A DNA stretch of 64,000 nt from positions 1 to 64,000 of the IMG/VR virus record IMGVR_UViG_3300017786_003484; one strand, written 5' to 3'. A program made the position numbers and the translations under genes. Shown here piece after piece: positions 34,850 to 48,912 of this stretch. Position 1 is the first letter of the stretch. The number at the start of each line of letters is the position of its first letter. The notes below the pieces were generated by a model that did no database searches, was not told where the DNA came from, and worked only from the letters and a program-made list of their open reading frames with translations.

Positions 34850-35872
34850 ATGAATCAACCTTTTAAGAAAGCCGCATATTTTACGGATATTCATTTTGGT
34901 TTAAGAAATAACAGTCGAGCTCATAATGATGACTGTGAAAACTTTATCAAGTGGTTTGTAGAAGAAGCTCACAAAGAAGGATGCGAAACTTGTATCTTTG
35001 GTGGCGATTGGCATAATAGCCGTAGTAATATTAATGTTAGTACACTTAATTATACTACCACAAATTTAGAATACTTGAGCCAAAACTTTGAAAATGTCTA
35101 TGTGATTATGGGCAATCATGACTTGGCTTATAGAGAAAAACGAGAAATTAATTCTCTGCCTTTTGGCGAATATTTGACAAATTTGCATATTATTAATGAA
35201 CTTACTACTATTGGTGACATGACTATTGTTCCTTGGTTAGTTGGTGAAGAATGGACAGAAATGAGAAATATACATTCTCGTTACATATTTGGACACTTTG
35301 AACTTCCTCGTTTTAAAATGAATGCTATGGTAGAGATGCCGGACCATGGAGGGCTAAATGGGGATCATTTTCCTAATCAGGAATTTGTATTCAGCGGACA
35401 CTTTCATAAGAGGCAAAGAAGAGGAAATGTAATCTACACAGGTAATGCTTTCCCTCATAATTTTGCTGATGCAGGTGATGACGAAAGAGGCATGATGATA
35501 CTTCCTTATGGTGGAGAGTATGTATTTAGACAGTGGCCAGATGCTCCTAAATTTAAAACTATGTCGTTGACACATGCAATTGACAACCATACACATTTGT
35601 TTGATCATACAACTTTTGCTCGTATTACTATTGATGTTGATATTAGTTACGAAGAAGCATCTTATATCAAAGAAAAGTGGTATAACGAATATGGAATGCG
35701 TGAATTATCTCTTATACCAAATGCTAAGGAAGAACATTCTAAAGAATGGGATGGCGGAGAAATTAAATTTGAAAGTGTTGATGCTATTGTTCTAAATCAA
35801 ATTCAATCTATTGATTCTGATGTAATAGATAGAAAATTATTAACAGAAATATACCAAGGATTGAATAAATGA
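34850..35872 (+). CDS. Recombination nuclease, T4 gp47/SbcD/Mre11-like
   Basis: Metallophosphoesterase motifs DIHFG, GD, GNHD, GHFE, SGHFH. Confidence 0.92.
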   Translation: MNQPFKKAAYFTDIHFGLRNNSRAHNDDCENFIKWFVEEAHKEGCETCIFGGDWHNSRSNINVSTLNYTTTNLEYLSQNFENVYVIMGNHDLAYREKREINSLPFGEYLTNLHIINELTTIGDMTIVPWLVGEEWTEMRNIHSRYIFGHFELPRFKMNAMVEMPDHGGLNGDHFPNQEFVFSGHFHKRQRRGNVIYTGNAFPHNFADAGDDERGMMILPYGGEYVFRQWPDAPKFKTMSLTHAIDNHTHLFDHTTFARITIDVDISYEEASYIKEKWYNEYGMRELSLIPNAKEEHSKEWDGGEIKFESVDAIVLNQIQSIDSDVIDRKLLTEIYQGLNK

Positions 35873-37638
35873 TTATATTCAAGAATATTACAATAAAAAA
35901 CTTTATGAGTGTTGGTAATGTTACTCAGGCATTAAACTTAGACAAAGATGGTTTGACTCTTGTACTAGGAAATAACTTAGATTTAGGTGGCGATGGAGCT
36001 CGTAATGGTGTTGGTAAAACAACTATTGTTAATGCTTTGTCTTTTGCACTTTATGGTGATGCATTAACTACAATCCGTAAACATAACCTAATTAACAAAA
36101 CTAATGGCAAGAATATGCTTGTTACATTAGAGTTTGAAAAGAACGGCGAAAAGTTTAAAATTGAACGTGGACGTAGTCCAAATGTCTTACATTTTTATAT
36201 TAACGATAGTAAGTTAGGTGATGTAACAGATGAAGGACAAGGCGAAAATAGAGTTACACAAAAAGAAATAGATAGGCTTATTGGCATGGGCAAAGAAATG
36301 TTCAAACACCTTGTTGCATTGAACACTTATACACAACCTTTCTTATCTTTACGGGCCAATGAACAACGAGAAATTATTGAAGAACTTCTCGGTATTACAC
36401 AACTTAGTGAAAAAGCTGACATACTTAAAGAAGGTATTAGAAATACTAAGGATCTGGTTAAAGATGAAGAATCAAGGCATCGTGCATTAGAAGAAAGTAA
36501 TGCTAGAGTTAAGTCTACTATTGACGATTTAAAAAGACGTAGCAGGACATGGGCTAAGAAAAAAGATGCTGACTTAACTAATTTGTTGGCTGGTATTACA
36601 GAGTTAGAATCAACAGATATTGATGCAGAACTTGCATCTCACAGGGCATTAGAAGTTTTTAAAGAAAACGATAATCGCCTAAAGTTAGCCAATAAAGAAC
36701 TTGCTTCTAGACAGAGTAATATTAATAAACTTAAGGAATCTTTTAAATTATCTGAAAATAATTTAGTATCTTTAAAGGATAATAAGTGCCATACTTGTGG
36801 TACTAAGTTACAAGACGAAAAGCAAAAAACTTTAATAACAGAATCTAACAATATGCTAAATCAGATTAAAGATGCTCTTAAAGAAGAACATGGTCTTTTA
36901 GCACAAGCAGATATTGCTGTTCGAGATATTGGAGATATGGGTACAAGACCTAGTACAAAATATTTGAATATTGAAGAAGCAATTAAACACCAGAGTAATT
37001 TAGAAAACTTAAAAAGTACTCTGGTAAACAAGGAAGGAGAGGCAGATCCTTACCAGGAGCAAATAGAAGCTCTTGAAACTACTGCCCTTGCAGAAATATC
37101 ATGGGAGAACATGAATGAGTATACAAAACTGCAAGAACACCAAGAATTTTTGTTAAAATTGCTTACTAACAAGGACTCATTTGTCCGTAAACGCATTATC
37201 GAGCAGAATTTAGCATATTTGAACCACAGACTAGGTTATTACTTGGATAAGTTACAATTACCACATGAAGTGGAATTTAAAAGCGACTTAGAGGTTGACA
37301 TTACTCAATTGGGTCAAACATTTGATTTTGACAACCTAAGCAGGGGAGAACGTAACAGGTTAATCTTAGCTCTAAGTTGGAGTTTTAGAGATGTGTATGA
37401 GAGTTTCACAGAACCTATGAATTTATTGTTTATTGATGAATTAGTAGACTCAGGCATGGACCAAGTTGGTATTGAGTTATCAATGAGTGTCTTAAAGAAA
37501 ATGGGCCGTGAAATGAAACGTAATGTCTTTTTAATCAGCCATCGAGACGAACTCGCTGGTCGTGTAAACAACGTACTAATGGTTGTTAAGCAAAATGGTT
37601 TTACCGAGCTTGACAATTCTACTGAAATTATTTTATAA
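35869..37638 (+). CDS. Recombination ATPase, T4 gp46/SbcC/Rad50-like
   Basis: Walker A NGVGKTT, zinc hook CHTC, signature LSRGE, Walker B LFIDE, ISH. Confidence 0.93.
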   Translation: MIIFKNITIKNFMSVGNVTQALNLDKDGLTLVLGNNLDLGGDGARNGVGKTTIVNALSFALYGDALTTIRKHNLINKTNGKNMLVTLEFEKNGEKFKIERGRSPNVLHFYINDSKLGDVTDEGQGENRVTQKEIDRLIGMGKEMFKHLVALNTYTQPFLSLRANEQREIIEELLGITQLSEKADILKEGIRNTKDLVKDEESRHRALEESNARVKSTIDDLKRRSRTWAKKKDADLTNLLAGITELESTDIDAELASHRALEVFKENDNRLKLANKELASRQSNINKLKESFKLSENNLVSLKDNKCHTCGTKLQDEKQKTLITESNNMLNQIKDALKEEHGLLAQADIAVRDIGDMGTRPSTKYLNIEEAIKHQSNLENLKSTLVNKEGEADPYQEQIEALETTALAEISWENMNEYTKLQEHQEFLLKLLTNKDSFVRKRIIEQNLAYLNHRLGYYLDKLQLPHEVEFKSDLEVDITQLGQTFDFDNLSRGERNRLILALSWSFRDVYESFTEPMNLLFIDELVDSGMDQVGIELSMSVLKKMGREMKRNVFLISHRDELAGRVNNVLMVVKQNGFTELDNSTEIIL

Positions 37639-37648
37639 GGAGAATAAT

Positions 37649-37843
37649 ATGACAGACCCAAGAGATTCAGCTCACCATATAGCACTAATGGAAAATATGG
37701 ATACTTATATGGCAGAGAACAGAAAGTTTGTAGAAAAGGGAGTTAAGGCTTCTGCAACTAGAGCTCGTAAAGCTCTTCAGGCTATTGCTGTTGCTGTTAA
37801 AGAAAGACGTAAAGAAATCACAGAAGAGAAAAACGCACTTTAA
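37649..37843 (+). CDS. Histone H1-like (Hc1-type) small basic protein
   Basis: KFVEKGVKASATRARKAL...RKEI; AAGGAG RBS before ATG 37649. Confidence 0.65.
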   Translation: MTDPRDSAHHIALMENMDTYMAENRKFVEKGVKASATRARKALQAIAVAVKERRKEITEEKNAL

Positions 37844-38355
37844 TGCCAAGTAAAAGTAAAACTAAAGGATCAAGTTTTGAGAGGGAGGTTGCAACACATC
37901 TCTCAGAAATTTACAACGAAAGTTTTGTAAGAGTTCCAAACTCAGGAGCTTTTGTTGGAGGAATGAATCAGGCTCGTAAAAGCTATCTAAGTGAAGAACA
38001 AATTAGAGGCTTTAAAGGAGATATTATTCCTGGTCCTAGTTTTCCTTTATTGGTATTTGAATGCAAATTTTATGCAGACTTTCCTTTCCATCAGTTACTT
38101 CAAAATACGGACGTACTGATATTAGATGACTGGATAAATCAAACTATAGACTGTATGGATGATGGCGACTTAGGACTTCTTTGTATGAAGTTTAATAGAA
38201 AAGGTCGTTATGTTGCATACGAGGACAAGTTTAAATTTAAGACAACAAGATCTATAAACTATAAAAATTGGCTCATAACAGAATACGATTCCTTTTGGGA
38301 ATTGAATGTAGAACAAGTAAAAACATACTCAAAACTCACAGAGACCATCTCTTAG
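37843..38355 (+). CDS. Holliday junction resolvase (PD-(D/E)xK, Hjc-like)
   Basis: SKTKGSSFERE, SGA, GDII, FECK. Confidence 0.75.
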   Translation: MPSKSKTKGSSFEREVATHLSEIYNESFVRVPNSGAFVGGMNQARKSYLSEEQIRGFKGDIIPGPSFPLLVFECKFYADFPFHQLLQNTDVLILDDWINQTIDCMDDGDLGLLCMKFNRKGRYVAYEDKFKFKTTRSINYKNWLITEYDSFWELNVEQVKTYSKLTETIS

Positions 38356-38359
38356 ACAC

Positions 38360-38890
38360 ATTGGCAAGCTATCTACTGATAGGTTAGTGCAAGCCGTTTA
38401 TATTGCACCCATAAAATCTGGATCAATTAAGGATCGCAGAGGACGGAAGTTCTGAGCAGTAGCAGAGACATATCACCACTATCCTTGACAGGACGTAGTT
38501 CAAACAGCATGAAACTGGACTGGTGTATGTATAGTATTGCTAAAATGAGTAGGCTCTGGTGAACTATTACAACCTACATAACAATAGAATTGGTTTGGTT
38601 TGGTTCTATTTGTTTGCGTTATTACAGTCTAGTGTAAAAGGGTACCGCGTAACCGCCCTAACAGAAATGTTGCTTTAACCAAAGTGTGGTAGAGGTCTGT
38701 GTCAAGACAACCATTTATCTTAGCCCCTAAACGGGGCTAAGTGTGGATAGTTAATCTATGTCAAGCTAAACTTAAAAATATTAGAGTCAAACTTATATAA
38801 TAAAAACTATGTGTTATCGTTTGAAATATAAAATTGAATGAGTAGAGCAACGCGATACGATATTCATGGACGAAGTATTCGTCCTGTAAC
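38360..38890 (+). ncRNA. Candidate large structured non-coding element (ncRNA or origin); strand tentative
   Basis: Largest ORF-free gap in the window, packed with at least 9 helices including a GAAA tetraloop and a 9-bp perfect stem. Confidence 0.45.
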
Positions 38891-38922
38891 TGATTCTTAA
38901 CAATGTTAATGAGCAACTCTGG

Positions 38923-39150
38923 CTAACGCATCTGATTAGCAATACCCTTTTTACCATACATTGTATCTATCTTCTCTTTAACTACTTCTGATAAGATTAC
39001 TCTGTCAGTATATGGCATATCCCATACAACTTGTATAGGGTTGCTACTCCAAACACTTAAATTACATATATCTTGGGTTAGGGCTCTTGACTCAGATTCA
39101 AAACTTTCGATATACTTTGTAATCTTATTTGAATCAGTTCCTAGACTCAA
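38923..39150 (-). CDS. gp51-like small protein; likely -1 frameshift extension of the upstream gene
   Basis: VWDMPYTDRVIL motif; only a TTG start overlapping the upstream stop; frame is open back to a T8 run. Confidence 0.6.
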   Translation of the reverse strand: MSLGTDSNKITKYIESFESESRALTQDICNLSVWSSNPIQVVWDMPYTDRVILSEVVKEKIDTMYGKKGIANQMR

Positions 39151-40040
39151 GAGCCTTCGGAAAAAAAACTTGTTGGATCAAAAAGCATATCTGTTTTGTA
39201 TTCTTCTTGGCAAAAATCACATTTAGCTGAAACTTCTCTGATAATTCCAAATTCTTGGAATGCTTTTAATTCTTCTTCTAACCTATCAACTGAGCCTCTG
39301 TCGAGGTTACCCAACCAGTCAGCAATAAATTTTATATCAGTTATTTCTTGTGGTTCTGCTTCTCCGGTACCTGGGATAACAACTTTAAGAATTGCGCCAA
39401 TCATTAAGTCATGACTTAGATCAACTAATTGAGCAAAGCCTGCATTTGCAATTTCAGTTTGTCTTTCTACTGGTTCTTCTCGTTGTTCACTTGACTGTAA
39501 TGCCCTCATCGAATCAAATTGCATTCGTAGTAAACGTGATTGATCTTTTAAATTATACGGTCTTAGATGTACTTCTAAGTTATTTGCAAGTTTCACGATG
39601 CCTAATTTAGCTGGAATTGGCTTTAATGTACCAATTATCTGTCCTAAACTTACATTTATTCGTTGAGACTTACCATCAGACTCGTTACAGCCATGACTGA
39701 TATCCATTGGCATATCGTCTCCGTAACTTGCCATTTTAATTGCAACTAAAATCATATCAACATCTGCTGACGGAACTTCATCAACATCAGCAATGTCTGG
39801 ACAAGAACTTTTGATTACACCTCTCATTGCTTCACCGTTAAATAAAGCGTCAGGGTTTTTAAGGCGTAATTCGTCTTTTGCAGTCATTGGATATATTGCA
39901 AGTTCCCCGCTTTCAGTTAACTTAGGTGGCTGTTTATAGTATCTTCCATTAGAAGGAAGAGTAATATATGTTCCAGGTTGCCTAAAATAATCCGATAAAG
40001 GGTTAGCAGTTTGCCCGGAAAGTGGGTTTTTATTATCCAT
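39147..40040 (-). CDS. Baseplate hub/tail assembly chaperone, T4 gp26-like
   Basis: ITLPSNGRYY, PMTAKDE, DVDMILVAIK..SYG, C-terminal CDFC...DPTSFF. Confidence 0.75.
   Translation of the reverse strand: MDNKNPLSGQTANPLSDYFRQPGTYITLPSNGRYYKQPPKLTESGELAIYPMTAKDELRLKNPDALFNGEAMRGVIKSSCPDIADVDEVPSADVDMILVAIKMASYGDDMPMDISHGCNESDGKSQRINVSLGQIIGTLKPIPAKLGIVKLANNLEVHLRPYNLKDQSRLLRMQFDSMRALQSSEQREEPVERQTEIANAGFAQLVDLSHDLMIGAILKVVIPGTGEAEPQEITDIKFIADWLGNLDRGSVDRLEEELKAFQEFGIIREVSAKCDFCQEEYKTDMLFDPTSFFSEGS
39161..39168 (-). other. Slippery sequence T TTT TTT (-1 frameshift site)
   Basis: Minus strand AGT TTT TTT TCC GAA GGC TCT TGA; -1 frame reads TTT TTC CGA AGG CTC TTG AGT... into the downstream ORF. 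Confidence 0.6.
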
Positions 40041-40134
40041 GTAGTTAATCCTATCAGGTAAATAGGCTTATAGAAACCTATATTTGTAACTATACTTATA
40101 TTCGGTTATAAAGCACAAAGGTCCAAAAGGTAAT

Positions 40135-43134
40135 ATGGAAGAAGAATTAAAAGAAGCAATTGGTAAATTAACCGATCAGATTTCCAGTATGAATAAACAA
40201 ACAGGCTCAAGACCTGGTGGAAGTCGTGGATCTACAGGTCCTAAAGTTGATGCTACTGCTTCGGCAATGGACAAACTAAAAGATGGGGTCAAAGGTACTA
40301 CTTCAAGTTTAAAGAAAACTGCTGAATCAAACGAAAAACTTGTACAAGCATCTAAAAAACTTACCTGGGAGCAAAAATCACAAATAAGAGGATTGCAAAA
40401 TTTTGGTAAAGGATTACTTGACGGAAGTAAAAAAGGACAAGATTCTTTAAACCAGTTATCCGGAGCTCTAACAAATAGCACAGGAAAAGTTACTAAAGTA
40501 CTTGGCGCCTTTGCCGCTGGTTTAGGTTTTGCATGGGGAACATTAGAAAATTTTGCAGATGCCGCTAGAGGAGCAAGTGGAGCATTAAACTTAGGTGCTG
40601 TTGGTGTTGGCTTAATGCAAACACAAAGTATGATGTCAGGACTTGGCAAAGAGTTTGCAACTGTTATTAATGAAAGCGGAGGCGGTTTTAAATTATTAGG
40701 AGCAACTACAGAAGACGCAGTTAGAAACTTATCTCAAATGTCGAGAGCAGTTAGAAACGGTTCTTCTATGATGGGCAACCTTACAAAAGAATTTGGTGTG
40801 TCAGCAAAAGCAGTCGACGAAACTGCAAAGTTAACTGCTCAGTTAGGACTTACAGAAAAAGATAGTGCCAGCTTAATGGCCGCTAGTTTAGATGTTGCAA
40901 GAAGGTCTGGTGCTTCACAAGAAACAGCAATGCAGACTGCAATTAAAAGTTATGCTACTACTGCAAAGACAGCTCGAGGATTAAGCGATCAATTTGGTGT
41001 TAGTGCCAAGGTAATTATGCAGGCTTCAATGGCTTTCCAGAAATCTATTGCAGGACAAAGAGCCGCAATGCTTGGAGTAGGAACAGATGCTACTGAAATC
41101 CAAGGAGTAATGGGTCAAATGCTTGGTAATCTAAGCCAAGATCAAAGAGATAGAGCATCAGCCGCAATGGCCGCAGGAGAAATTGGACAAGCTATTGCTA
41201 TTGCAACTGAAGGTAAATCTGGAGCAGAAGCAAGTGCAACTGCTGACATGATAAGAATGATATCTGAAGCAAACACCGGAAAAGGTGATGGTACAGTTTT
41301 ACAAGCTCTTAAAGGTATGGAAAATGCTTCCATGGAACAGTTTGCAAGCAGTAGAAACTTTAGAGATCAAAATATGAATGCCGCGGCAGGAATTGGCGCC
41401 GCATTTAAACGATTAAGTGATGATGCAGATAAGTCTAATAAAGATGCTAAGAAAAATGCAGAAGAAGGTCAAACTACAGAAGCAAGCAATATTAAGTCTC
41501 TTACACAAATGTCAACAGCCGTTGATTATGCTAAAGGATCATTTTATGGTTTAATAGCAGGTGGTGTTGGATTACTAGGATCGTTTGTATCGTTAGCGGC
41601 CGCAGGTAGTGCCGCCGCTATAGCAATGGGTGGCGGAGGCTTAACAGGAATGTTAGGTGGACTTAGCAAAGGACTTAATAAAATAACATCTGGTGCGTTA
41701 GGATCAGTAGGTAAAGTAGGCGGAGCAGTATCTGGTGCAACCGGAGGAATGCTTAGTAAAGCAAAAGGATTTTTAGGAATTGGAGCAGGAGGAGGTTCTG
41801 CTACTCAGTCTGTACCTGGTGTGCCTAGCACTAAAGGAATGCAAACAGCAGTAGGTGAAGTTAAAAGCCTAGGAAAGATGATACAAGATACTTTATCAGG
41901 TATAGGAAACGGAATTGCAAAATTAGCAAGAGGCATAGGCAGTTCATTATCTTCTATTGGAACAGGAATTTCAAAGTTAGCAAAAGGAATTGGCAGATCA
42001 ATGTCCTCTCTTGGTAAAGGTATTGGAGATTTAGGAGAAGGACTAGGTAGAGGAATTGGAAAACTAGTTGAAAGTTCTTTAAAAGGAATTGGTAAAGGAC
42101 TTGCCGCAGTATCTAATCCAAAATATTTAATTGGAGCCGCAGTACTAGCCGCAACAGGTGGTGCAATGTGGATTGCTGGAAAAGCATTCCAACAGTTTGC
42201 AAATATTAATTGGGGCGGAGTAATTGCTGGAGGCATTGCCCTAGCCGCAGTAACAGCAGGTGCCGCATTAATTGGATCATCTGGTATGATTGCACCTATT
42301 CTAATTGGAGCAGTAGCAATTGGAGCTCTTGGAGCCGCACTAATACCATTTAGCTATGCCGCTAAACTTGCAGGCGAAGGAATGGTAGACTTAGGTAGAG
42401 GGTTAAGAATAATTGGTGATGTTCCAATTCCAACGTTACTTGCTATAGGTCCTGCATTAGCATTAATGGGAGTAGGTTTAGCCGCACTTTCAGCCGCTGG
42501 TGCAGTAAGTTCTCTTTTAGGAGCATTCCAAGATGAAGGACCAATTGATAAAATTGTAAAAATTGCCAAAGCCGCTCCTGGTGTTAACTTAATGGCTAAG
42601 TCTTTAAGAACATTTGGTATTAACATAATGGTCTTTAACAAAGGACTTGAAGGTTTAAGTATGACAGCATTAGATGCTTTAGAAGACTTTAATGACGTTG
42701 CAAGTAATATATCACAATCTTCTGTAACTGCAATGGCAGATTTAGCAGTAGCAACTTCGTTACTTGGATTTAATATAAAAGATATAGATTGGAATCAATT
42801 AGTTTTACCAGTAGACATTGGTGAAAGATATCATAATTTAGCAGAAGGAATGGTAGCAACTGCTGAAGCAATGGATAAGATGCCTAAGCCAGGTATGTGG
42901 GACACTATTGTTGCAGGTGTAGGCAACTTGTTTGGAGTAAATGGTGGAGAACAAGGTAGCTTGACTGAGTCAGTTCAGAAAGAAAGAACCACAACTACAA
43001 CATACAGCGATGGATCTGTTGATACAAATACAGAGATGATTACAGTTCTTAAGTCTATTGACGGACATATGGGCAAAGTTACTCAGAATACTAAGAAAGA
43101 AGTAACTGTAACAGCACCTCGCTTTGGTAGTTAA
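40135..43134 (+). CDS. Tape-measure-like protein
   Basis: 999 aa, Ala/Gly-rich helical, 11-residue GIG repeats, hydrophobic segments; divergent from chaperone gene. Confidence 0.65.
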   Translation: MEEELKEAIGKLTDQISSMNKQTGSRPGGSRGSTGPKVDATASAMDKLKDGVKGTTSSLKKTAESNEKLVQASKKLTWEQKSQIRGLQNFGKGLLDGSKKGQDSLNQLSGALTNSTGKVTKVLGAFAAGLGFAWGTLENFADAARGASGALNLGAVGVGLMQTQSMMSGLGKEFATVINESGGGFKLLGATTEDAVRNLSQMSRAVRNGSSMMGNLTKEFGVSAKAVDETAKLTAQLGLTEKDSASLMAASLDVARRSGASQETAMQTAIKSYATTAKTARGLSDQFGVSAKVIMQASMAFQKSIAGQRAAMLGVGTDATEIQGVMGQMLGNLSQDQRDRASAAMAAGEIGQAIAIATEGKSGAEASATADMIRMISEANTGKGDGTVLQALKGMENASMEQFASSRNFRDQNMNAAAGIGAAFKRLSDDADKSNKDAKKNAEEGQTTEASNIKSLTQMSTAVDYAKGSFYGLIAGGVGLLGSFVSLAAAGSAAAIAMGGGGLTGMLGGLSKGLNKITSGALGSVGKVGGAVSGATGGMLSKAKGFLGIGAGGGSATQSVPGVPSTKGMQTAVGEVKSLGKMIQDTLSGIGNGIAKLARGIGSSLSSIGTGISKLAKGIGRSMSSLGKGIGDLGEGLGRGIGKLVESSLKGIGKGLAAVSNPKYLIGAAVLAATGGAMWIAGKAFQQFANINWGGVIAGGIALAAVTAGAALIGSSGMIAPILIGAVAIGALGAALIPFSYAAKLAGEGMVDLGRGLRIIGDVPIPTLLAIGPALALMGVGLAALSAAGAVSSLLGAFQDEGPIDKIVKIAKAAPGVNLMAKSLRTFGINIMVFNKGLEGLSMTALDALEDFNDVASNISQSSVTAMADLAVATSLLGFNIKDIDWNQLVLPVDIGERYHNLAEGMVATAEAMDKMPKPGMWDTIVAGVGNLFGVNGGEQGSLTESVQKERTTTTTYSDGSVDTNTEMITVLKSIDGHMGKVTQNTKKEVTVTAPRFGS

Positions 43135-43162
43135 GTATTAATATAAAAAGGTAAGTAATAGT

Positions 43163-44827
43163 ATGGCATCATGGAAAAAACATTTTAAGATATGGGATCC
43201 CCAAGCTGAACAGACTAATAATGGTCCAAGACAGCAGGGAGGTAGTTCATCTAAGTTCGCTAGTTGGCTACAAGACGTGTACACAGGGCAACCTAACAGA
43301 GTTGAACGTTATAGTCAGTATGATCAAATGGATCAAGACTCAGAAGTTAATGCGGCCTTAGACACAATTACAGAATTTTGTACTCAGGAGGATCCTTTAA
43401 CACATCTTCCTTTTGCTTTAAGATGGTCCTCTGACCCAACACCAAGTGAAAATACAACTATTAATGAAACACTTAAAAAATGGTGTGCTATTAACGGATT
43501 TGATCAAAAACTATTTAGAACTTTTAGAAGTGCTATTAAGTTTGGAGATCACTTCTTTTTACGTGATCCGGAAACATTTGAATTATATTGGGTAAATCCA
43601 GGTGATGTTAAAAGAGCAGTAATTAACGAAGCTGAAGGTCGTAAAGTTGAACAGTATGTTATTAGTAACTTACACCCTAACTTAGGAGCAAAAGTAGCAA
43701 CTAAGCCAATTGAAAGTGTTCAATCAATGGCCAATGCAGTACAAGCAGGACCAAACAATCAATATAACGTTTCAAATAGTGCTTATAAAAGTGGTAACAC
43801 AGGAACCGAAGTTACAGTTGATGCAAAAGATATGATTCATATTAGTTTAAGCGAAGGCTTAGATGCTAACTGGCCTTTTGGAGCAAGTATACTTGATAGT
43901 GTTTTTAAAATTTATAAACAAAAAGAATTATTAGAAGATGCGATTATCATTTATCGTGTACAAAGAGCACCAGAACGTAGAGTATTTTATATTGATACAG
44001 GTAATTTACCTAGTCATCAAGCAATGGGATTTCTTGAAAGAGTTAAAAACGAAATACACCAAAGACGTATTCCTACTAGATCAGGTGGTGGTACTACTAT
44101 GGATGCAAGTTACAATCCTTTGAGCATTATGGAAGACTTTTTCTTTGCTCAATCAGCTGACGGTAGAGGAAGTAAAGTTGAAGTATTACCGGGTGGAACA
44201 AACTTAGGTGAAATTGACGATTTAAAATTCTTTTCAAACAAATTAATGAGAGGTTTAAGAATTCCTAGTAGTTATATGCCTACTGGACCTGACGATAGTG
44301 CAGTTCAATTAACAGATGGTCGTGTAGGAACAGCATTAATTCAAGAATATCGCTTTAATAGATACTGTCAGAGACTCCAAGGTTTAATTATGCCTATGCT
44401 ATGTAAAGAGTTTAAAACTTTTGTAAAGCATAGAGGTATTAATGTAGACACATCTTCTTTTGAGATTGATATGCTAGAGCCTCAAAACTTTAGTGATTAT
44501 AGACAAATTGAAGTTAATAATGCAAGGGCTAGTGTGTTTACACAATTAGCAGAAGTACCTTACATGAGTCATAGATTTAAGTTACAAAAGTTCTTAGGTT
44601 TAACTGATGCAGAGTTACTTGAAAATGAAAAACTTTGGTTAGAAGAAAATAAAAACCCAACACCAGCTGAAGGCGACGAAGAAGCTGGATTTAGCGATAT
44701 TGGTGGCGGTGCCGGCGGTGGCGGACTAAGTGATGGTGATATGGACTTTGCCGACGACTTAGAAAATGCAGAACCAGCCGCAGACGATGGTGGCGGTGAA
44801 TCTGCACCTACAGAACCAGAAGCATAA
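43163..44827 (+). CDS. Portal protein, T4 gp20-like
   Basis: EDAIIIYRVQRAPERRVFYIDTGNLP, MEDFFF, GRGSKVEVLPGG.NLGEIDD. Confidence 0.95.
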   Translation: MASWKKHFKIWDPQAEQTNNGPRQQGGSSSKFASWLQDVYTGQPNRVERYSQYDQMDQDSEVNAALDTITEFCTQEDPLTHLPFALRWSSDPTPSENTTINETLKKWCAINGFDQKLFRTFRSAIKFGDHFFLRDPETFELYWVNPGDVKRAVINEAEGRKVEQYVISNLHPNLGAKVATKPIESVQSMANAVQAGPNNQYNVSNSAYKSGNTGTEVTVDAKDMIHISLSEGLDANWPFGASILDSVFKIYKQKELLEDAIIIYRVQRAPERRVFYIDTGNLPSHQAMGFLERVKNEIHQRRIPTRSGGGTTMDASYNPLSIMEDFFFAQSADGRGSKVEVLPGGTNLGEIDDLKFFSNKLMRGLRIPSSYMPTGPDDSAVQLTDGRVGTALIQEYRFNRYCQRLQGLIMPMLCKEFKTFVKHRGINVDTSSFEIDMLEPQNFSDYRQIEVNNARASVFTQLAEVPYMSHRFKLQKFLGLTDAELLENEKLWLEENKNPTPAEGDEEAGFSDIGGGAGGGGLSDGDMDFADDLENAEPAADDGGGESAPTEPEA

Positions 44828-44844
44828 AAGGAATAAGTAAAGTT

Positions 44845-45051
44845 ATGAGATTTAATGACTTAACAAGAATACAAGACGAAATCGAAGAAGAAATCGATCC
44901 TGAGGTAGCATTCTATTCCGACATGCGTAGACACCGTATGACTTTAGAACATGTTAACAGGTTGCGTAAACTTCGTGAACTAAGGAAATACGAGCAAAAA
45001 ACAAGACTTGAAGCCATTACTAAAATGTATCAACGTCCTCCTGCAGTTTAG
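44845..45051 (+). CDS. Small head-module protein
   Basis: 68 aa, TLEHVNRLRK; between portal and scaffold. Confidence 0.65.
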   Translation: MRFNDLTRIQDEIEEEIDPEVAFYSDMRRHRMTLEHVNRLRKLRELRKYEQKTRLEAITKMYQRPPAV

Positions 45052-45212
45052 CAATATTCTTTAAAAATATTAGATTTTCATTAATAATAAGCCGGTTTGT
45101 AAAAATTGTGCCAAAAAGTACAGTTTTTACCCTATAACTACGGCTTTTTCGTGCGTCATTAGTAAGTACTTATTGGTGAATACCCGCCTTTCGCGATAAG
45201 GAGAAAAAGAAT

Positions 45213-45929
45213 ATGACAACAGTACTTGAACAGGCACTTGAGCACCTCTTGAATAAAGAAGAGGACAAAGCAAGTATCCTATTACATGATTACTATGTTG
45301 GTATTGGTCGTAAAGTCTATGAAGACATTATGTCCGACGATACTAATCTAGAAGAAGAAATTGAAGATATTGATGCCGCAGTTGATGAAGTTGAATCTGA
45401 TTTAACTGAAGAAGGTGACGATATGGAGGCAGAAATGGATGCTATTGATGCAGACGCAGACGCCGCAGAAATTGCAACAGATATGGATGCTGATGAAGCA
45501 CCTGTATCATCTGATGCCGCTGACGTTGCTGATGCAATGGTTGACGTAGAAGCCGCACTAGCTAACCTAAAAGCAGAATTTGAAGACATGCTAACAGGTG
45601 GTGACGCAGAAGCACCAGCAGAAGAAGAAATGCCAGAAGAAAGTGTACAATTTGAAGAAAAAGAAGAAAGCCTCGATGAAGCTGATTCTGAAGAGCAAAT
45701 TGACGAAGCGGCAGAACTTAAATTAGCACAGAAGCCAGATATGGCCGACCATGCAGACAATAAAGCAAGCCCAGTCGCTAAGAAAAATGACATGGGTGGT
45801 AAAGCAGTTAACATGGCAGGTGGATCTGCAGAAGGTGTAGCATCTGGAACAACTCCAGCTAAAGCTCCAGCTTCACAGGAACTACCACATGGAACTACTG
45901 AGCCAGCAATGAGCCAGGTAAAGGGTTAA
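45213..45929 (+). CDS. Acidic prohead core/scaffold-like protein
   Basis: Very Glu/Asp-rich, strong RBS, precedes the prohead protease. Confidence 0.65.
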   Translation: MTTVLEQALEHLLNKEEDKASILLHDYYVGIGRKVYEDIMSDDTNLEEEIEDIDAAVDEVESDLTEEGDDMEAEMDAIDADADAAEIATDMDADEAPVSSDAADVADAMVDVEAALANLKAEFEDMLTGGDAEAPAEEEMPEESVQFEEKEESLDEADSEEQIDEAAELKLAQKPDMADHADNKASPVAKKNDMGGKAVNMAGGSAEGVASGTTPAKAPASQELPHGTTEPAMSQVKG

Positions 45930-45933
45930 TAAG

Positions 45934-46572
45934 ATGAACTTACAACCATTAACAGAAAGACTATCATTCGACCAAGCGAATCTCGTTGTCGAAATGGCAG
46001 AGAATCAGGATGGTGGTAAGGATCTCTACATGAAAGGGATTTTCATACAAGGTGATAAAAAGAATCATAACGAAAGAGTTTATCCAGCAGATGAAATTTC
46101 TCGGGCAGTAGAGAGCATTAGTCAAAGACTAGCAGATGGCTTTTCAGTATTAGGCGAAGCAGATCATCCAGATGATTTACAGGTTAACATCGACCGTGTC
46201 AGTCATATGGTTACTGAAATGTGGATGCAAGGTTCCGATGGATATGGAAAACTAAGAATTATTCCAACTCCAATGGGAAACATTATTAAAACATTACTAG
46301 AAAGCAAAGTAAAACTAGGAGTAAGTTCTAGAGGATCCGGGAATGTAGGCAACGGTGGAAACGTTTCAGATTTTGAAATTGTTACTGTTGATGTTGTAGC
46401 ACAACCGAGTGCCCCTGATGCTTATCCAACTCCAATTTACGAAAGAGTTATGCTAGACAAAAGACGAGCCGCTCTTATGGATGTAGCCCTAGCGACGACT
46501 TACGATAAGTCCGCACAAAAGCACCTTGAAATTGAGGTACTTAGATTCCTTGAGAATCTTAAAAAAGTCTGA
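45934..46572 (+). CDS. Prohead protease, T4 gp21-like
   Basis: GIFIQGD.KNHNERVY, GEADHP, LGVSSRGSG, DVVAQPSAPDA. Confidence 0.93.
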   Translation: MNLQPLTERLSFDQANLVVEMAENQDGGKDLYMKGIFIQGDKKNHNERVYPADEISRAVESISQRLADGFSVLGEADHPDDLQVNIDRVSHMVTEMWMQGSDGYGKLRIIPTPMGNIIKTLLESKVKLGVSSRGSGNVGNGGNVSDFEIVTVDVVAQPSAPDAYPTPIYERVMLDKRRAALMDVALATTYDKSAQKHLEIEVLRFLENLKKV

Positions 46573-46583
46573 GGAGACAAATT

Positions 46584-47696
46584 ATGAGTAATGAAAACTT
46601 TACAGATTTGCTCGGCTCTGTAACATTGTCTGAAGAGGTGCGTGATAATATCAACACCGCTTGGGATCAAAAACAGATTGAAACTCGTGAAGAAGTAACA
46701 GCAGAACTCCGTGAGGAATTTGCAACACGATATGAGCACGATAAAGGTCAACTCGTTGAAGCAATGGATAAATTGATTCAAGATACCATTTCTGGTGCTA
46801 GTGACGAGTTCAAGAAACTACATGAAGATACTAAACAATCTCGTGTAAAATATGCTACTAAGATTAGTGAAGATGCGAAACTTCTACAAAAATTTGTTAT
46901 GGAAACATTAGCAAAAGAAGTTAGTGAACTTAAATCTGATCGAGCCGCACAAAAAGAAAATTTTAAAGGCTTAGAAGAATTTGCCCTACGCAAATTAACT
47001 AATGAGCTTTCAGAGTTACACGAAGACCACAAACAATTAGTTGAAGCTCGTGTTAAACTAATTTCAGAAGGTCGTACTGCTATCGAAGAAGCAAGATCGC
47101 AATTTATTAAGAAAGCAAGTGAAAAGGTTAACAGCCTTGTAACTGAATCTTTCAAAACTGAATTGTCCTCGCTTAAAACTGATATCCGTGAAGCAAAAGA
47201 AAACAACTTTGGACGTAAAATTATGGAGGCTTTTGCCGCTGAATTTATGTCAAGTAAGTTTGCAGATGGAACAGCAGTAAGTGATCTTAATGGAAAAATT
47301 ACTGAGATGGAAGTAAAATTAGCAGAAGCACATAAAGCTATTGCTGATAAAGAACATCTCATCACCGAATCAAGTCGTTTACAGCGCCTAGCGGAAGATA
47401 AAATGACTAGATCTCGTATTATGCAAGAACTAAATGCTCCTTTATCAAAAGATAAAAGAGTTATTATGGATGAATTACTTGAGACAACTCCAACAAGTAA
47501 ACTCAATGAAGCATTCCAAAAGTACTTGCCATCAGTTCTTAACGAAGAGGTCCGTAGAGACAAGAAAGTTATCGTTGAGGGTCAACAATCACAGAAGACT
47601 GTGGTTACCGGAAACAAACCAGCAAATAACGTAGACGAAGCTCCAGTTGAAGTTGATTCAACTATTGCAGATCTTCGTAAACTAGCTGGACTCTAA
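46584..47696 (+). CDS. Prohead scaffold protein, T4 gp22-like
   Basis: Long coiled coil, FGRKIMEAF; between protease and MCP. Confidence 0.8.
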   Translation: MSNENFTDLLGSVTLSEEVRDNINTAWDQKQIETREEVTAELREEFATRYEHDKGQLVEAMDKLIQDTISGASDEFKKLHEDTKQSRVKYATKISEDAKLLQKFVMETLAKEVSELKSDRAAQKENFKGLEEFALRKLTNELSELHEDHKQLVEARVKLISEGRTAIEEARSQFIKKASEKVNSLVTESFKTELSSLKTDIREAKENNFGRKIMEAFAAEFMSSKFADGTAVSDLNGKITEMEVKLAEAHKAIADKEHLITESSRLQRLAEDKMTRSRIMQELNAPLSKDKRVIMDELLETTPTSKLNEAFQKYLPSVLNEEVRRDKKVIVEGQQSQKTVVTGNKPANNVDEAPVEVDSTIADLRKLAGL

Positions 47697-47712
47697 AGAA
47701 GGAGACATTAAA

Positions 47713-48912
47713 ATGTCAGAAGCTCTTTTTGAAGCTAAAAATTGGTCCGCAACTAAAGACGCCTTAACAGAAGGTCTTAACGGACAACGTAAATCTACAA
47801 TGGAAGTTTGCTTAGAAAATACTAAAAAGTATTTGGCTGAGACAGCAACCACTGGTGCAACAGCATCTGGAAACGTAGCAGTACTTAACAAAGTAATTCT
47901 ACCAGTTATCAGACGTGTTATGCCAACAACCATCGCTAACGAATTAGTCGGTGTTCAACCTATGCAGGGACCTGTTTCTCAGATTCATACACTTCGTGTA
48001 CGTTATGCTGAGGCAGCCGCCGCTTCTTCAAACGAAGACGGTGTAGTTGGTGCAGAGGTTGTTGCTGGTGATGAAGCATTATCACCATTTGCTATTGCTA
48101 ACCAGTACTCAGGTGGTGCTGATGGTAAAGCAGACGCAACTGCTACTAAAGAGGGAACTGGTGGAAACAAAATGTCAATCCAGATCCTTAAAGAAACTGT
48201 AGAAGCTAAATCCAGAAAGCTATCAGCTCGTTGGACATTTGAAGCCGCTCAGGACGCACAAGCCATTCATGGTGTTGACGTTGAAGCTGAAATCATGGCC
48301 GCACTTGCTCAAGAAATTACTGCTGAAATTGACCAGGAAGTTATCCAGTCATTAACAGCACTTTCCGGATCTGCATTTGGTACATATGACCAAGCCGCAG
48401 TAAGTGGTACAGCTAACTTCGTAGGTGACGAGCATGCCGCTCTTGCAGTTCTAATTAACAGAGCCGCTAACGACATTGCTTCTCGTACAAGACGTGGTGC
48501 AGGTAACTACATTGTTGTAAGCCCAACAGCTTTAACAATTCTACAATCTGCTACAACTTCAGCATTCGCTAGAACAACTGAAGGAACTTTTGAAGCACCA
48601 ACAAATACTAAGTTTGTTGGAACACTTAACAGCTCAGTAAGAGTATACGTTAACCACTACAGTGGTGACGCGGCTCCTGTATTGATTGGTTATAAAGGTG
48701 CAAATGAAATGGATGCTCCGGCATTCTATTGCCCATACATTCCATTGATGAGCTCAGGTGTTGTATTAGATCCTAACACATTCGAGCCAACTGTCAGCTT
48801 TATGACACGTTACGGATATGTTGAGCTTTCTAACACAGCTTCATCTCTTGGTAACGCGGCTGATTATGTTAATAACATTGCAATCACAAGCGGTAACCTT
48901 TCTTTCATCTAG
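47713..48912 (+). CDS. Major capsid protein, T4 gp23-like
   Basis: RRVMPTTIANELVGVQPM.GP, SRKLSARWTFEAAQD, EITAEIDQE, FYCPYIPL, TRYG. Confidence 0.96.
   Translation: MSEALFEAKNWSATKDALTEGLNGQRKSTMEVCLENTKKYLAETATTGATASGNVAVLNKVILPVIRRVMPTTIANELVGVQPMQGPVSQIHTLRVRYAEAAAASSNEDGVVGAEVVAGDEALSPFAIANQYSGGADGKADATATKEGTGGNKMSIQILKETVEAKSRKLSARWTFEAAQDAQAIHGVDVEAEIMAALAQEITAEIDQEVIQSLTALSGSAFGTYDQAAVSGTANFVGDEHAALAVLINRAANDIASRTRRGAGNYIVVSPTALTILQSATTSAFARTTEGTFEAPTNTKFVGTLNSSVRVYVNHYSGDAAPVLIGYKGANEMDAPAFYCPYIPLMSSGVVLDPNTFEPTVSFMTRYGYVELSNTASSLGNAADYVNNIAITSGNLSFI

What the first reader, a model, noticed from the sequence alone, without database searches (positions are those of the whole stretch)
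38923..40040. Programmed -1 frameshift fusing a gp26-like gene to a gp51-like ORF (lambda G/GT logic in a T4-like phage)
Seen: the gp26-like ORF ends ...DPTSFFSEGS* over AGT TTT TTT TCC, an X XXY YYZ heptamer. A -1 slip gives ...SFF-FRRLLSLGTDSNK... in frame with the 75-aa ORF, which otherwise has only a TTG start and a weak RBS. The gene sits head-to-head with the tape-measure-like gene. Established: tail-assembly chaperones G/GT are made by -1 frameshifting next to tape-measure genes in many long-tailed phages. Inference: this gp26/gp51-type pair is the equivalent, giving ~297-aa and ~370-aa products.
Basis: partly seen in the sequence, partly recalled or inferred. Interest (0 to 1): 0.7.

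Follow-up and report, generated by a model that had tools for sequence, protein, structure and literature searches.

The report
Frameshifted tail chaperone gene, jumbo phage
A marine jumbo phage most likely makes a short and a long version of its T4 gp26/gp51-type tail/baseplate assembly chaperone from one gene by a programmed -1 ribosomal slip, a known phage trick that is conserved in this whole phage group but mostly missing from genome annotations.

Summary
The 297-aa gp26-like ORF (40040..39147, minus strand; PF12322) ends over a T8 run. A -1 slip on T_TTT_TTT (39168..39162) opens a 79-codon frame, giving a product of about 372 aa.

Comparison across relatives makes a programmed frameshift very likely:
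- All 71 distinct relatives (32-100% identity, including PA5oct, Atu_ph07, Phosso, 121Q-like, Serratia BF and RAS14) keep T_TTT_TTC or T_TTT_TTT in the same phase.
- A 75-81-aa -1 ORF follows the heptamer.
- The most variable codon position moves from the 0 frame to the -1 frame exactly at the heptamer.
- Several clades have no start codon for the small ORF.
- An 8-9 bp stem starts 6 nt downstream of the heptamer and shows compensatory changes.
- Independent metagenome assemblies confirm T8.
- One lineage instead carries two tandem genes: a short one, and a long one with core and extension in a single frame.

T4 gp26 (short) and gp51 (long) both belong to PF12322. The extension resembles gp51's C-terminal helices, with modest statistics. 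Citing papers report that Vladimirov et al. 2022, which I could not read, identified the T4-like tail assembly chaperones as a short gene plus a longer fused gene. I file this as a well-supported new member of a known kind. No protein-level evidence exists yet.

The parts
39147..40040 (-). 0-frame gene for the short product (297 aa): gp26-like PF12322 'T4_baseplate' / phrog_150 protein. It is the only PF12322 gene in the 244-kb record.
39162..39168 (-). Slippery heptamer T_TTT_TTT (X_XXY_YYZ; P-site TTT 39167..39165, A-site TTT 39164..39162). The rest of the family has T_TTT_TTC at the same place.
39156..39161 (-). 6-nt spacer (TCCGAA) between the heptamer and the stem. The length is invariant in all 42 aligned sequences.
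39147..39155 (-). 5' arm of the stimulatory stem (GGCTCTTGA). It contains the 0-frame stop TGA 39149..39147 and encodes R-L-L in the -1 frame.
39082..39090 (-). 3' arm of the stem (TCAAGAGCC), about 58 nt downstream of the 5' arm. It encodes S-R-A of the extension.
38923..39162 (-). -1-frame extension: 79 codons plus TAG. It is predicted to be read only after the slip, giving a long product of about 372 aa (residues 1-293 of the short product plus 79).
39178..39180 (-). TGA that closes the -1 frame just upstream of the heptamer. It is present in 43 of 46 main-clade sequences, so the -1 frame cannot be entered from further upstream.
40135..43134 (+). Divergently transcribed 999-aa Gly/Ala-rich protein, tape-measure-like (phrog_167, E 3e-6). 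The equivalent divergent neighbours in PA5oct, Ecwhy_1 and Serratia BF are annotated as structural or virion structural proteins.

Best explanation
One gene gives two proteins. Most ribosomes translate the gp26-like frame to the TGA at 39149..39147 and release a 297-aa short form. A minority pause where an RNA stem begins 6 nt past the heptamer U_UUU_UUU (39168..39162). The two tRNA-Phe slip back one base, and translation continues in the -1 frame for 79 more codons. The result is a long form of about 372 aa carrying an extra four-helix C-terminal domain. The pair corresponds to the short and long tail assembly chaperones of long-tailed phages (lambda G/GT). Within the T4 lineage it corresponds to gp26 (short) and gp51 (long), which T4 encodes as two diverged paralogous genes. 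Shown here: the recoding signals and their conservation, and that core plus extension exists as a single natural polypeptide in one lineage. Inferred: that the slip is ribosomal, its efficiency, and the chaperone role for the neighbouring tape-measure-like protein and the baseplate hub.
For: (1) Heptamer. 71 of 71 distinct genes have TTTTTTC (64) or TTTTTTT (7) in X_XXY_YYZ phase. The preceding codon varies (AGT, GAT, ACT, CAT) but always ends in T (58% T elsewhere in these genes), and the first Phe codon is always TTT (78% elsewhere).
(2) -1 ORF. An ORF of 75-81 aa follows in 79 of 80 metagenomic loci and in PA5oct, Atu_ph07, Phosso, Ecwhy_1, Serratia BF and RAS14. The 0-frame stop moves between 1 and 11 codons after the heptamer.
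(3) Frame of selection. The most variable codon position switches from 0-frame position 3 to -1-frame position 3 exactly at the heptamer. The two codons after it read R/Q/F then R/Q in the -1 frame, but 7-8 unrelated residues in the 0 frame.
(4) No start. There is no ATG/GTG/TTG before codon 13-28, or none at all, in the clades of L066, L067, L069-L075 and L080. The main clade has only a TTG without a Shine-Dalgarno sequence, although the residues before it are conserved.
(5) RNA stem. RNAalifold predicts an 8-bp stem at a fixed 6-nt spacing. 98.2% of cells are paired, with 18 compensatory cells against 3.5 in shuffles (0 of 500 shuffles reach this), and the signal collapses when the partner is slid. 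Some compensating changes are synonymous on both arms (L067). A structure downstream of the slip site can act on ribosomes but not on RNA polymerase.
(6) Natural fusion. P0303 (351 aa) matches a profile of the fused products over positions 23-353 (E 1.8e-53) with no slippery site. It sits next to a 294-aa short paralogue. Its AlphaFold2 model is confident across the junction (pLDDT 89.6, pTM 0.85).
(7) Rarity of other forms. 103 of 105 profile hits among 1.84 billion representative proteins are orphan ORFs of 30-98 aa, and all but four of the 120 listed homologues of the core are 293-298 aa (none near 370).
(8) T4 link. gp26 and gp51 both match PF12322 and phrog_150, and gp51 carries the extra C-terminal part. 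The extension aligns to gp51 columns 204-253 (E 0.0031; 0 of 40 column shuffles reach the score). After the beta-hairpin both models show the same order of helices: short, long, very short, long.
(9) T8 is confirmed in independent assemblies.
(10) Literature. Leiman et al. 2010 list gp26 and gp51 as hub assembly chaperones (PMC3004832). PMC10885494 summarises Vladimirov et al. 2022 as finding that some T4-like phages carry a short and a longer fused TAC gene instead of frameshifting. G/GT biology is described in PMC5009743.
Against: There is no protein, ribosome-profiling or reporter evidence. In the main clade the invariant TTG overlapping the TGA (TTGA) could support termination-reinitiation. 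Seven sequences and Phosso have an ATG at codon 2 of the -1 frame. The extension gets no Pfam or PHROG hit by itself. HMMER finds no gp51 with the extension profile, so the gp51 link rests on modest hhalign statistics and secondary-structure order. The long-range stem is not evident in Ecwhy_1, Serratia BF or RAS14. One locus, L074, has the -1 ORF cut after 11 codons. The gene is divergent from the tape-measure-like gene rather than directly upstream and co-directional as in the classic arrangement, and the tape-measure assignment is itself weak (E 3e-6).
Confidence: 0.82

Rival explanations
1. Two separate genes. The 75-aa ORF is translated on its own by termination-reinitiation at the TTGA overlap (ATGA in Phosso and some clades), and the T run merely encodes a conserved Phe-Phe.
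For: TTG overlaps TGA in all main-clade sequences. An ATG lies at codon 2 of the -1 frame in 7 metagenomic sequences and in Phosso. Gene callers and several GenBank records list the ORF as a separate small protein.
Against: The -1-frame codons upstream of the TTG are conserved as R/Q-R-L while the 0 frame there is free. Several clades have no start codon within 13-28 codons, or none. There is no Shine-Dalgarno sequence. The heptamer is kept at the nucleotide level, including the third base of a variable preceding codon. A natural single-frame fusion exists. The TTG and TGA lie inside a conserved stem.
Confidence: 0.07
2. The long product is real, but it arises by transcriptional slippage: RNA polymerase adds one U in the T run, so that ordinary translation reads through. 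The ribosome does not slip.
For: The window clade has T8, near the length at which bacterial RNA polymerase slips appreciably (my own knowledge; general treatment in PMC5009743). The title of Vladimirov et al. [quoted passage not shown] I could not read the paper, and PMC10885494 summarises that mechanism as two genes.
Against: 64 of 71 genes have only T6 followed by C. The conserved, covarying stem lies downstream of the run at the 6-nt spacing typical of ribosomal -1 stimulators, and a structure not yet transcribed cannot act on the polymerase. The strict X_XXY_YYZ phase is what tRNA re-pairing needs. The one contig from an RNA library that covers the run shows T8, but contigs hide minor species.
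Confidence: 0.09
3. Artefact or decay: a homopolymer sequencing error or a recently broken gene, the true gene being one continuous ORF of about 370 aa.
For: Homopolymers are error-prone. The UNVERIFIED record CMSTMSU has T5 at this site, alongside other frame breaks.
Against: The same break in the same phase is present in 71 distinct genes from many samples and in cultured phages. All but four of the 120 listed homologues are 293-298 aa and none is near 370 aa. Two independent runs give T8.
Confidence: 0.01

Closest known systems
Lambda gpG / gpGT tail assembly chaperones and the conserved -1 frameshift of long-tailed phages (Levin et al. 1993; Xu, Hendrix & Duda 2004, 2013, 2014, as reviewed in PMC5009743)
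   Same: Two overlapping frames. [quoted passage not shown] The second frame has no start of its own. The result is a short major product and a C-terminally extended minor one. The gene sits next to a tape-measure-like gene.
   Different: The protein family is unrelated (PF12322, about 300 aa, against about 140 aa for gpG). The gene is divergent from the tape-measure-like gene rather than immediately upstream of it. The heptamer is U_UUU_UUC/U rather than G_GGA_AAG (my own knowledge). A conserved long-range stem is present. Binding partners and product ratio are untested.
T4 gp26 and gp51 (hub assembly chaperones; reported as the T4-like tail assembly chaperones by Vladimirov, Gautam & Davidson 2022, PMID 34826709; not readable here, summarised in PMC10885494 and PMC12846349)
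   Same: Same Pfam and PHROG family for the core. gp26 ends 3 residues after the conserved Phe-Phe (EFFELL*), where the window's short form ends. gp51 continues into a helical C-terminal tail that aligns with the -1 extension and has the same order of helices.
   Different: T4 uses two diverged genes on opposite strands and has no slippery site (TTC TTT). The window phage has a single PF12322 gene and a frameshift. The extension is about 79 aa against about 50 aa in gp51. The homology of the tails is only modestly supported.
Tandem short and long PF12322 genes of the uncultured phage contig L090
   Same: The long gene (P0303, 351 aa) is core plus extension in one frame and matches the fused profile end to end. 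The short gene (294 aa) ends at NFFTDNK*.
   Different: There is no frameshift. The short gene still has AAT TTT TTC, but its -1 frame is closed at once. This lineage is rare, with only 2 protein clusters.
E. coli dnaX -1 frameshift (heptamer, short spacer, downstream stem-loop; my own knowledge, general treatment in PMC5009743)
   Same: Homopolymeric-type heptamer followed after about 6 nt by a stable helix.
   Different: No upstream Shine-Dalgarno-like stimulator is seen here. The helix closes a domain of about 58 nt rather than a simple hairpin. In dnaX the shifted frame terminates at once, whereas here it adds a domain.

Membership tests
PF12322 T4_baseplate (gp26/gp51 family) | Match to the family profile above the curated cut-off | tested here: met
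   P0001: 39.4 bits against a cut-off of 24.5, E 6.9e-10, profile positions 12-218 of 219. phrog_150 E 7e-15. Whole-genome scan gave 38.5 bits and found a single copy. BFVD fold matches to 'baseplate hub assembly protein' for the related long form.
Frameshifted tail assembly chaperone (G/GT type) | Second ORF in the -1 frame overlapping the 3' end of the first, without an initiation signal of its own | tested here: met
   The overlap window is 39177..39150. The main clade has only a TTG and no Shine-Dalgarno sequence. Several clades have no start codon for 13-28 codons, or none.
Frameshifted tail assembly chaperone (G/GT type) | X_XXY_YYZ slippery heptamer inside the overlap, conserved among homologues | tested here: met
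   71 of 71 distinct genes: TTTTTTC in 64 and TTTTTTT in 7, always in phase.
Frameshifted tail assembly chaperone (G/GT type) | Purifying selection on the -1 frame beginning at the shift site | tested here: met
   Shift of codon-position entropy at the heptamer, and residue counts in both frames.
Frameshifted tail assembly chaperone (G/GT type) | Gene lies immediately upstream of, and co-directional with, the tape measure gene, downstream of the tube gene | tested here: not met
   The gene is adjacent but divergent (40040 against 40135). The neighbour is only weakly tape-measure-like (phrog_167, E 3e-6). No tube gene is nearby; the next genes are portal, protease and major head protein. T4 gene 26 is likewise on the opposite strand from the 51-27-28 (then 29, my own knowledge) gene cluster.
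Frameshifted tail assembly chaperone (G/GT type) | Short form binds the tape measure, the added domain binds the tube protein; neither is in the virion; fixed low ratio of long to short | not testable with these tools
   Only a hint: in the PA5oct RefSeq record the neighbouring structural and portal proteins carry an 'ESI-MS/MS' note and the baseplate-hub homologue does not.
T4 gp51 (long form: PF12322 core plus gp51-specific C-terminal domain, listed as PF28602 in precomputed annotations) | Homology of the C-terminal domain | tested here: inconclusive
   hhalign E 0.006 and 0.0031, correct co-linear placement, 0 of 40 column shuffles reach the score, same helix order in two AlphaFold2 models. 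However, there is no HMMER, Pfam or PHROG hit, and PF28602 is not in the local Pfam copy.
Rfam frameshift elements | Match to a curated covariance model | tested here: not met
   Only a chance snoRNA match at E 0.76.

The most novel reading that the evidence does not exclude
The -1 frameshift in a single PF12322 gene may be the ancestral way of making the short and long forms of this chaperone. T4's gp26 + gp51, and independently the tandem pair of L090, would then be later resolutions of it into two genes. The signal (U_UUU_UUC, a 6-nt spacer and a covarying long-range stem that encloses the 0-frame stop) would be an undescribed recoding element shared by a very large group of jumbo phages and missing from their annotations.
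Probability: 0.3. Interest if true: 0.6.

Novelty: new member of a known kind. Interest (0 to 1): 0.45.

Why it matters
The finding supplies frameshift-based evidence that the gp26/gp51 family really is the T4-lineage counterpart of the G/GT tail assembly chaperones, because members of the family carry the hallmark -1 frameshift. It also explains why T4 has two paralogous 'hub assembly' proteins.

On the practical side, a conserved protein domain is unannotated or mis-annotated as an orphan ORF in RefSeq and GenBank jumbo-phage genomes (PA5oct, Atu_ph07, Phosso, 121Q-like phages, Serratia BF) and in about a hundred metagenomic protein clusters. The compact, strongly conserved signal is a good test case for frameshift predictors and for bench assays in the cultured relatives.

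Tried and rejected
- A search of the region and of the 79-aa peptide against the phage collection (blastn and tblastn respectively) found nothing.
- Pfam and PHROG scans of the extension, alone and for 41 relatives, gave nothing meaningful.
- Reading the fused product with four-letter codon words scrambled the frame, so I abandoned it. The fused product was therefore built only inside scripts and never sent to the restricted tools.
I rebuilt the alignment without that sequence.
- A mixed core-plus-extension alignment was misaligned by MAFFT. I replaced it with one checked offline.
- HMMER with the fused profile against T4 gp26 and gp51 was not significant.
- Fold searches of the long-form model against PDB and AlphaFold-DB Swiss-Prot gave no match.
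- The sigma-70 promoter and terminator scan stayed at chance level.
- Rfam gave nothing.
- A search for the tube gene (PF06841) gave only a weak hit outside the window. I therefore did not attempt a complex prediction, and no binding claim rests on one.
- The reads available are assembler contigs, so minority T9 transcripts could not be assessed.
- Vladimirov et al. 2022 is not held in the library.

Full report
WHAT IS THERE. The window is the first 64 kb of a 244-kb IMG/VR phage record, estimated 74% complete. Its relatives occur in many marine metagenomes. The gene in question lies on the minus strand. The ORF 40040..39147 encodes 297 aa and matches PF12322 'T4_baseplate' (39.4 bits against a cut-off of 24.5) and phrog_150 'baseplate hub'.

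It ends ...GAT CCA ACA AGT TTT TTT TCC GAA GGC TCT TGA, with T8 at 39168..39161. The -1 frame is closed by TGA 39180..39178. It then reads S-N-K-F-F-F-R-R-L-L-S-L-G-T-D... to TAG 38925..38923. A slip on T_TTT_TTT (39168..39162) therefore joins residues 1-293 to 79 further residues, about 372 aa in all. The '75-aa ORF' of the ORF list starts at a TTG that overlaps the TGA (TTGA).

NOT AN ERROR. Loci from other metagenomes at 82-100% identity carry the same T8 (L005-L012). Logan contigs of two independent DNA runs span 38800..40200 without an indel. Of the 120 listed homologous proteins, all but four are 293-298 aa, none is near 370 aa, and almost all end in ...FDPTSFFxxGS.

COMPARATIVE EVIDENCE FOR RECODING. 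I fetched 80 IMG/VR loci whose product is 32-100% identical to the short form. I also looked at cultured jumbo phages found by tblastn: PA5oct, Atu_ph07, Phosso, Ecwhy_1 (Asteriusvirus), Serratia BF and Stenotrophomonas RAS14.

- Heptamer. In 71 distinct genes the heptamer is TTTTTTC (64) or TTTTTTT (7), always as X_XXY_YYZ. The codon before it encodes Ser, Asp, Thr or His but always ends in T, against 58% T in comparable codons elsewhere in these genes. The first Phe codon is always TTT, against 78% elsewhere.
- -1 ORF. The 0-frame stop lies 1, 4, 6 or 11 codons further on, depending on the clade. The -1 frame always opens into a homologous peptide of 75-81 aa with consensus FF-R-x-R-L-L-x-L-G-x-D...E-R-x-V-L-S-E-x-x-K-E. 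The one exception is L074, which is cut after 11 codons.
- Frame of selection. Entropy by nucleotide position shows the most variable codon position moving from 0-frame position 3 to -1-frame position 3 exactly at the heptamer. The two codons after it read R/Q/F then R/Q in the -1 frame, with synonymous CGN and AGG/CGG changes. In the 0 frame the same positions hold 7-8 unrelated residues.
- Initiation. The main clade has only the TTG at -1 codon 5 and no Shine-Dalgarno sequence. The clades of L066, L067, L069-L075 and L080 have no ATG, GTG or TTG before codon 13-28, or none at all, although the residues before that point are conserved.

RNA SIGNAL. Nine bases, GGCTCTTGA, are invariant in the main clade, including positions that are synonymous in both frames. 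They are the 5' arm (39155..39147) of a stem whose 3' arm, TCAAGAGCC (39090..39082), lies about 58 nt downstream.

RNAalifold, run on 42 diverse sequences, predicts exactly this 8-bp helix. It starts after a spacer that is 6 nt long in every sequence. 98.2% of cells are paired. Three pairs show changes on both sides, in 18 cells against 3.5 in shuffles, and 0 of 500 shuffles reach the observed values. Sliding the partner by one column drops pairing to 47-62%.

Examples of covariation: GGCTCTTG/CAAGAGCC in the main clade, Phosso and Atu_ph07; GGCTTTTG/CAAAAGCC; GGCTCCTG/CAGGAGCC, which is synonymous on both arms; and GGCTTTCT/AGAAGGCC. A heptamer, a 6-nt spacer and a downstream helix are the classical anatomy of bacterial -1 ribosomal frameshifting. 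A downstream helix cannot influence RNA polymerase. Together with T6 in most members, this argues against transcriptional slippage as the general mechanism. In the window clade (T8) it may contribute. The same helix is not evident in Ecwhy_1, Serratia BF or RAS14, which have other local hairpins. No Rfam family matches.

THE EXTENSION IS A C-TERMINAL DOMAIN OF THIS PROTEIN FAMILY. A profile of 40 extensions was searched against 1.84 billion representative proteins and found 105 proteins. Of these, 103 are orphan ORFs of 30-98 aa, one is a repetitive 879-aa protein that is probably spurious, and one is P0303, 351 aa.

The contig carrying P0303 (L090) has two tandem PF12322 genes. Gene A is 294 aa and ends NFFTDNK*; its -1 frame is closed immediately. 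Gene B is P0303. It matches a profile of the conceptual fused products over positions 23-353 (E 1.8e-53) and has no slippery site at the junction (...DWSSSF-RSRILTK...). Only one further cluster of this long type exists.

The AlphaFold2 model of P0303 is confident (pLDDT 89.6, pTM 0.85). It shows the extension as four helices (271-280, 284-311, 318-322, 326-344) following the Cys-rich beta-hairpin. The model has no match in PDB or AlphaFold-DB Swiss-Prot. In BFVD it has 53 matches, named 'baseplate hub assembly protein', 'baseplate hub subunit' or 'hub assembly chaperone'.

RELATION TO T4. In T4, gene 26 (208 aa) is followed by gene 25 and is divergent from gene 51 (249 aa). The small ORF is therefore not 'gp51' by position. 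However, gp26 and gp51 both match PF12322 (E 9e-64 and 4e-52) and phrog_150. gp26 covers profile positions 14-235 and gp51 covers 13-280. gp51 homologues carry a second, C-terminal Pfam entry in the precomputed lists.

gp26 ends ...EFFELL*, three residues after the conserved Phe-Phe, encoded by the non-slippery TTC TTT. gp51 continues at that point...VFKLLVNPDE.... Profile-profile comparison places the extension on gp51's C-terminal tail. With 41 sequences the E-value is 0.006. For the whole fused profile, co-linear over 243 columns, it is 0.0037. With 170 sequences it is 0.0031, aligning extension columns 30-92 to gp51 columns 204-253. The reversed alignment and 40 column-shuffled controls score at most 19.6, against 24.5 for the real one.

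A model of a gp51 homologue 95% identical to T4 gp51 (pLDDT 91.5) has the same succession after the beta-hairpin: short, long, very short and long helices at 196-203, 208-221, 226-230 and 234-249. I regard the homology as likely but not proven.

The window's record holds only one PF12322 gene. The simplest reading is that its 0-frame product is the gp26 equivalent and its frameshift product is the gp51 equivalent.

FUNCTION. Leiman et al. 2010 list gp26 and gp51 as hub assembly chaperones, and state that gp51 is required for assembly but absent from the particle (PMC3004832). [quoted passage not shown] PMC10885494 summarises it as finding that some T4-like phages carry one short gene and one longer fused gene instead of frameshifting. 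PMC12846349 cites it for poly-T slippery signals in TAC-N genes of T4-like phages.

The lambda paradigm is summarised in PMC5009743: G binds the tape measure, the T domain binds the tube protein, and the ratio is about 30:1. Consistent with a chaperone role, the gene is the divergent neighbour of a 999-aa tape-measure-like protein here (phrog_167, E 3e-6). In PA5oct, Ecwhy_1 and Serratia BF it is the divergent neighbour of large structural or virion structural proteins. Binding partners, product ratio and absence from the virion are untested.

VERDICT. Two refinements apply: 'gp51-like' describes the long product as a whole, and the signal includes a conserved covarying stem. Tail-chaperone frameshifts are a textbook feature, and the gp26/gp51 family has been proposed as the T4-type chaperone. 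This is therefore a new, unusually well-documented member of a known kind. It has annotation consequences for many jumbo-phage genomes. Whether it has already been described for these phages depends on a paper I could not read.

Noticed in passing
L002 (PA5oct NC_071039, about 77856..77620 of the record), L004 (Atu_ph07), L003 (Phosso), L086 (Ecwhy_1), L089 (Serratia BF): The conserved -1 extension is handled inconsistently in public records. It is unannotated in PA5oct. In Atu_ph07 it is annotated only as a 41-aa fragment (gp687). In Phosso, Ecwhy_1 and Serratia BF it is listed as a separate hypothetical protein starting at an internal ATG. No record viewed shows a joined (slippage) CDS.
   Followed up: partly
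L090:411-2389: This contig of an uncultured phage carries tandem PF12322 paralogues: a 294-aa short gene that keeps AAT TTT TTC but has a closed -1 frame, followed by a 351-aa gene with core and extension in one frame. It is a two-gene solution like T4 gp26 + gp51.
   Followed up: yes
L087 (Escherichia phage CMSTMSU MH494197, UNVERIFIED_ORG): The T run is T5 instead of T6, and the gp26-like gene is split into two annotated CDS by another frame break. These are probably homopolymer sequencing errors rather than biology.
   Followed up: partly
L074 (IMGVR_UViG_3300010885_020795): This is the only one of the 80 loci in which the -1 ORF is cut short (RMRLLTLKSGP then a stop). The heptamer and stem are intact. 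It could be a sequencing error or a decayed copy.
   Followed up: no
window 38720-38740: A perfect GC-rich hairpin (TTAGCCCC-TAAAC-GGGGCTAA) lies between the convergent RusA-like gene (37843..38355, +) and the end of the extension (38923, -). It is possibly a bidirectional terminator, but it has no T tail and the scan did not call it.
   Followed up: partly
window 35869-38355; L002; L003: Synteny is conserved across very distant jumbo phages. A RusA-like Holliday junction resolvase lies near the gp26-like gene in the window, PA5oct and Phosso. An SbcC-like nuclease subunit (phrog_77) lies upstream in the window, and a gp46-like exonuclease lies nearby in Atu_ph07.
   Followed up: no
window 40135-48912: The tape-measure-like gene is followed directly by head genes: portal (43163..44827), prohead protease (45934..46572) and major head protein (47713..48912). 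No tube or sheath genes follow. PA5oct has the same order (structural protein, then portal).
   Followed up: partly
G000:C1:71188-71526 (outside the window; L092): The only match to the T4 gp19 tube family is weak (18.8 bits, below the cut-off) and lies inside a 399-aa ORF. The tube protein of this phage was not identified.
   Followed up: no
BFVD matches of model md24ea5f0ad7b: Proteins of about 450-690 aa from other jumbo phages (Erwinia phiEaH2 and Special G, Ralstonia RSF1, Klebsiella Eowyn, Aeromonas PS1) share the fold at E 1e-4 to 1e-7. The family may be wider than PF12322 suggests.
   Followed up: no
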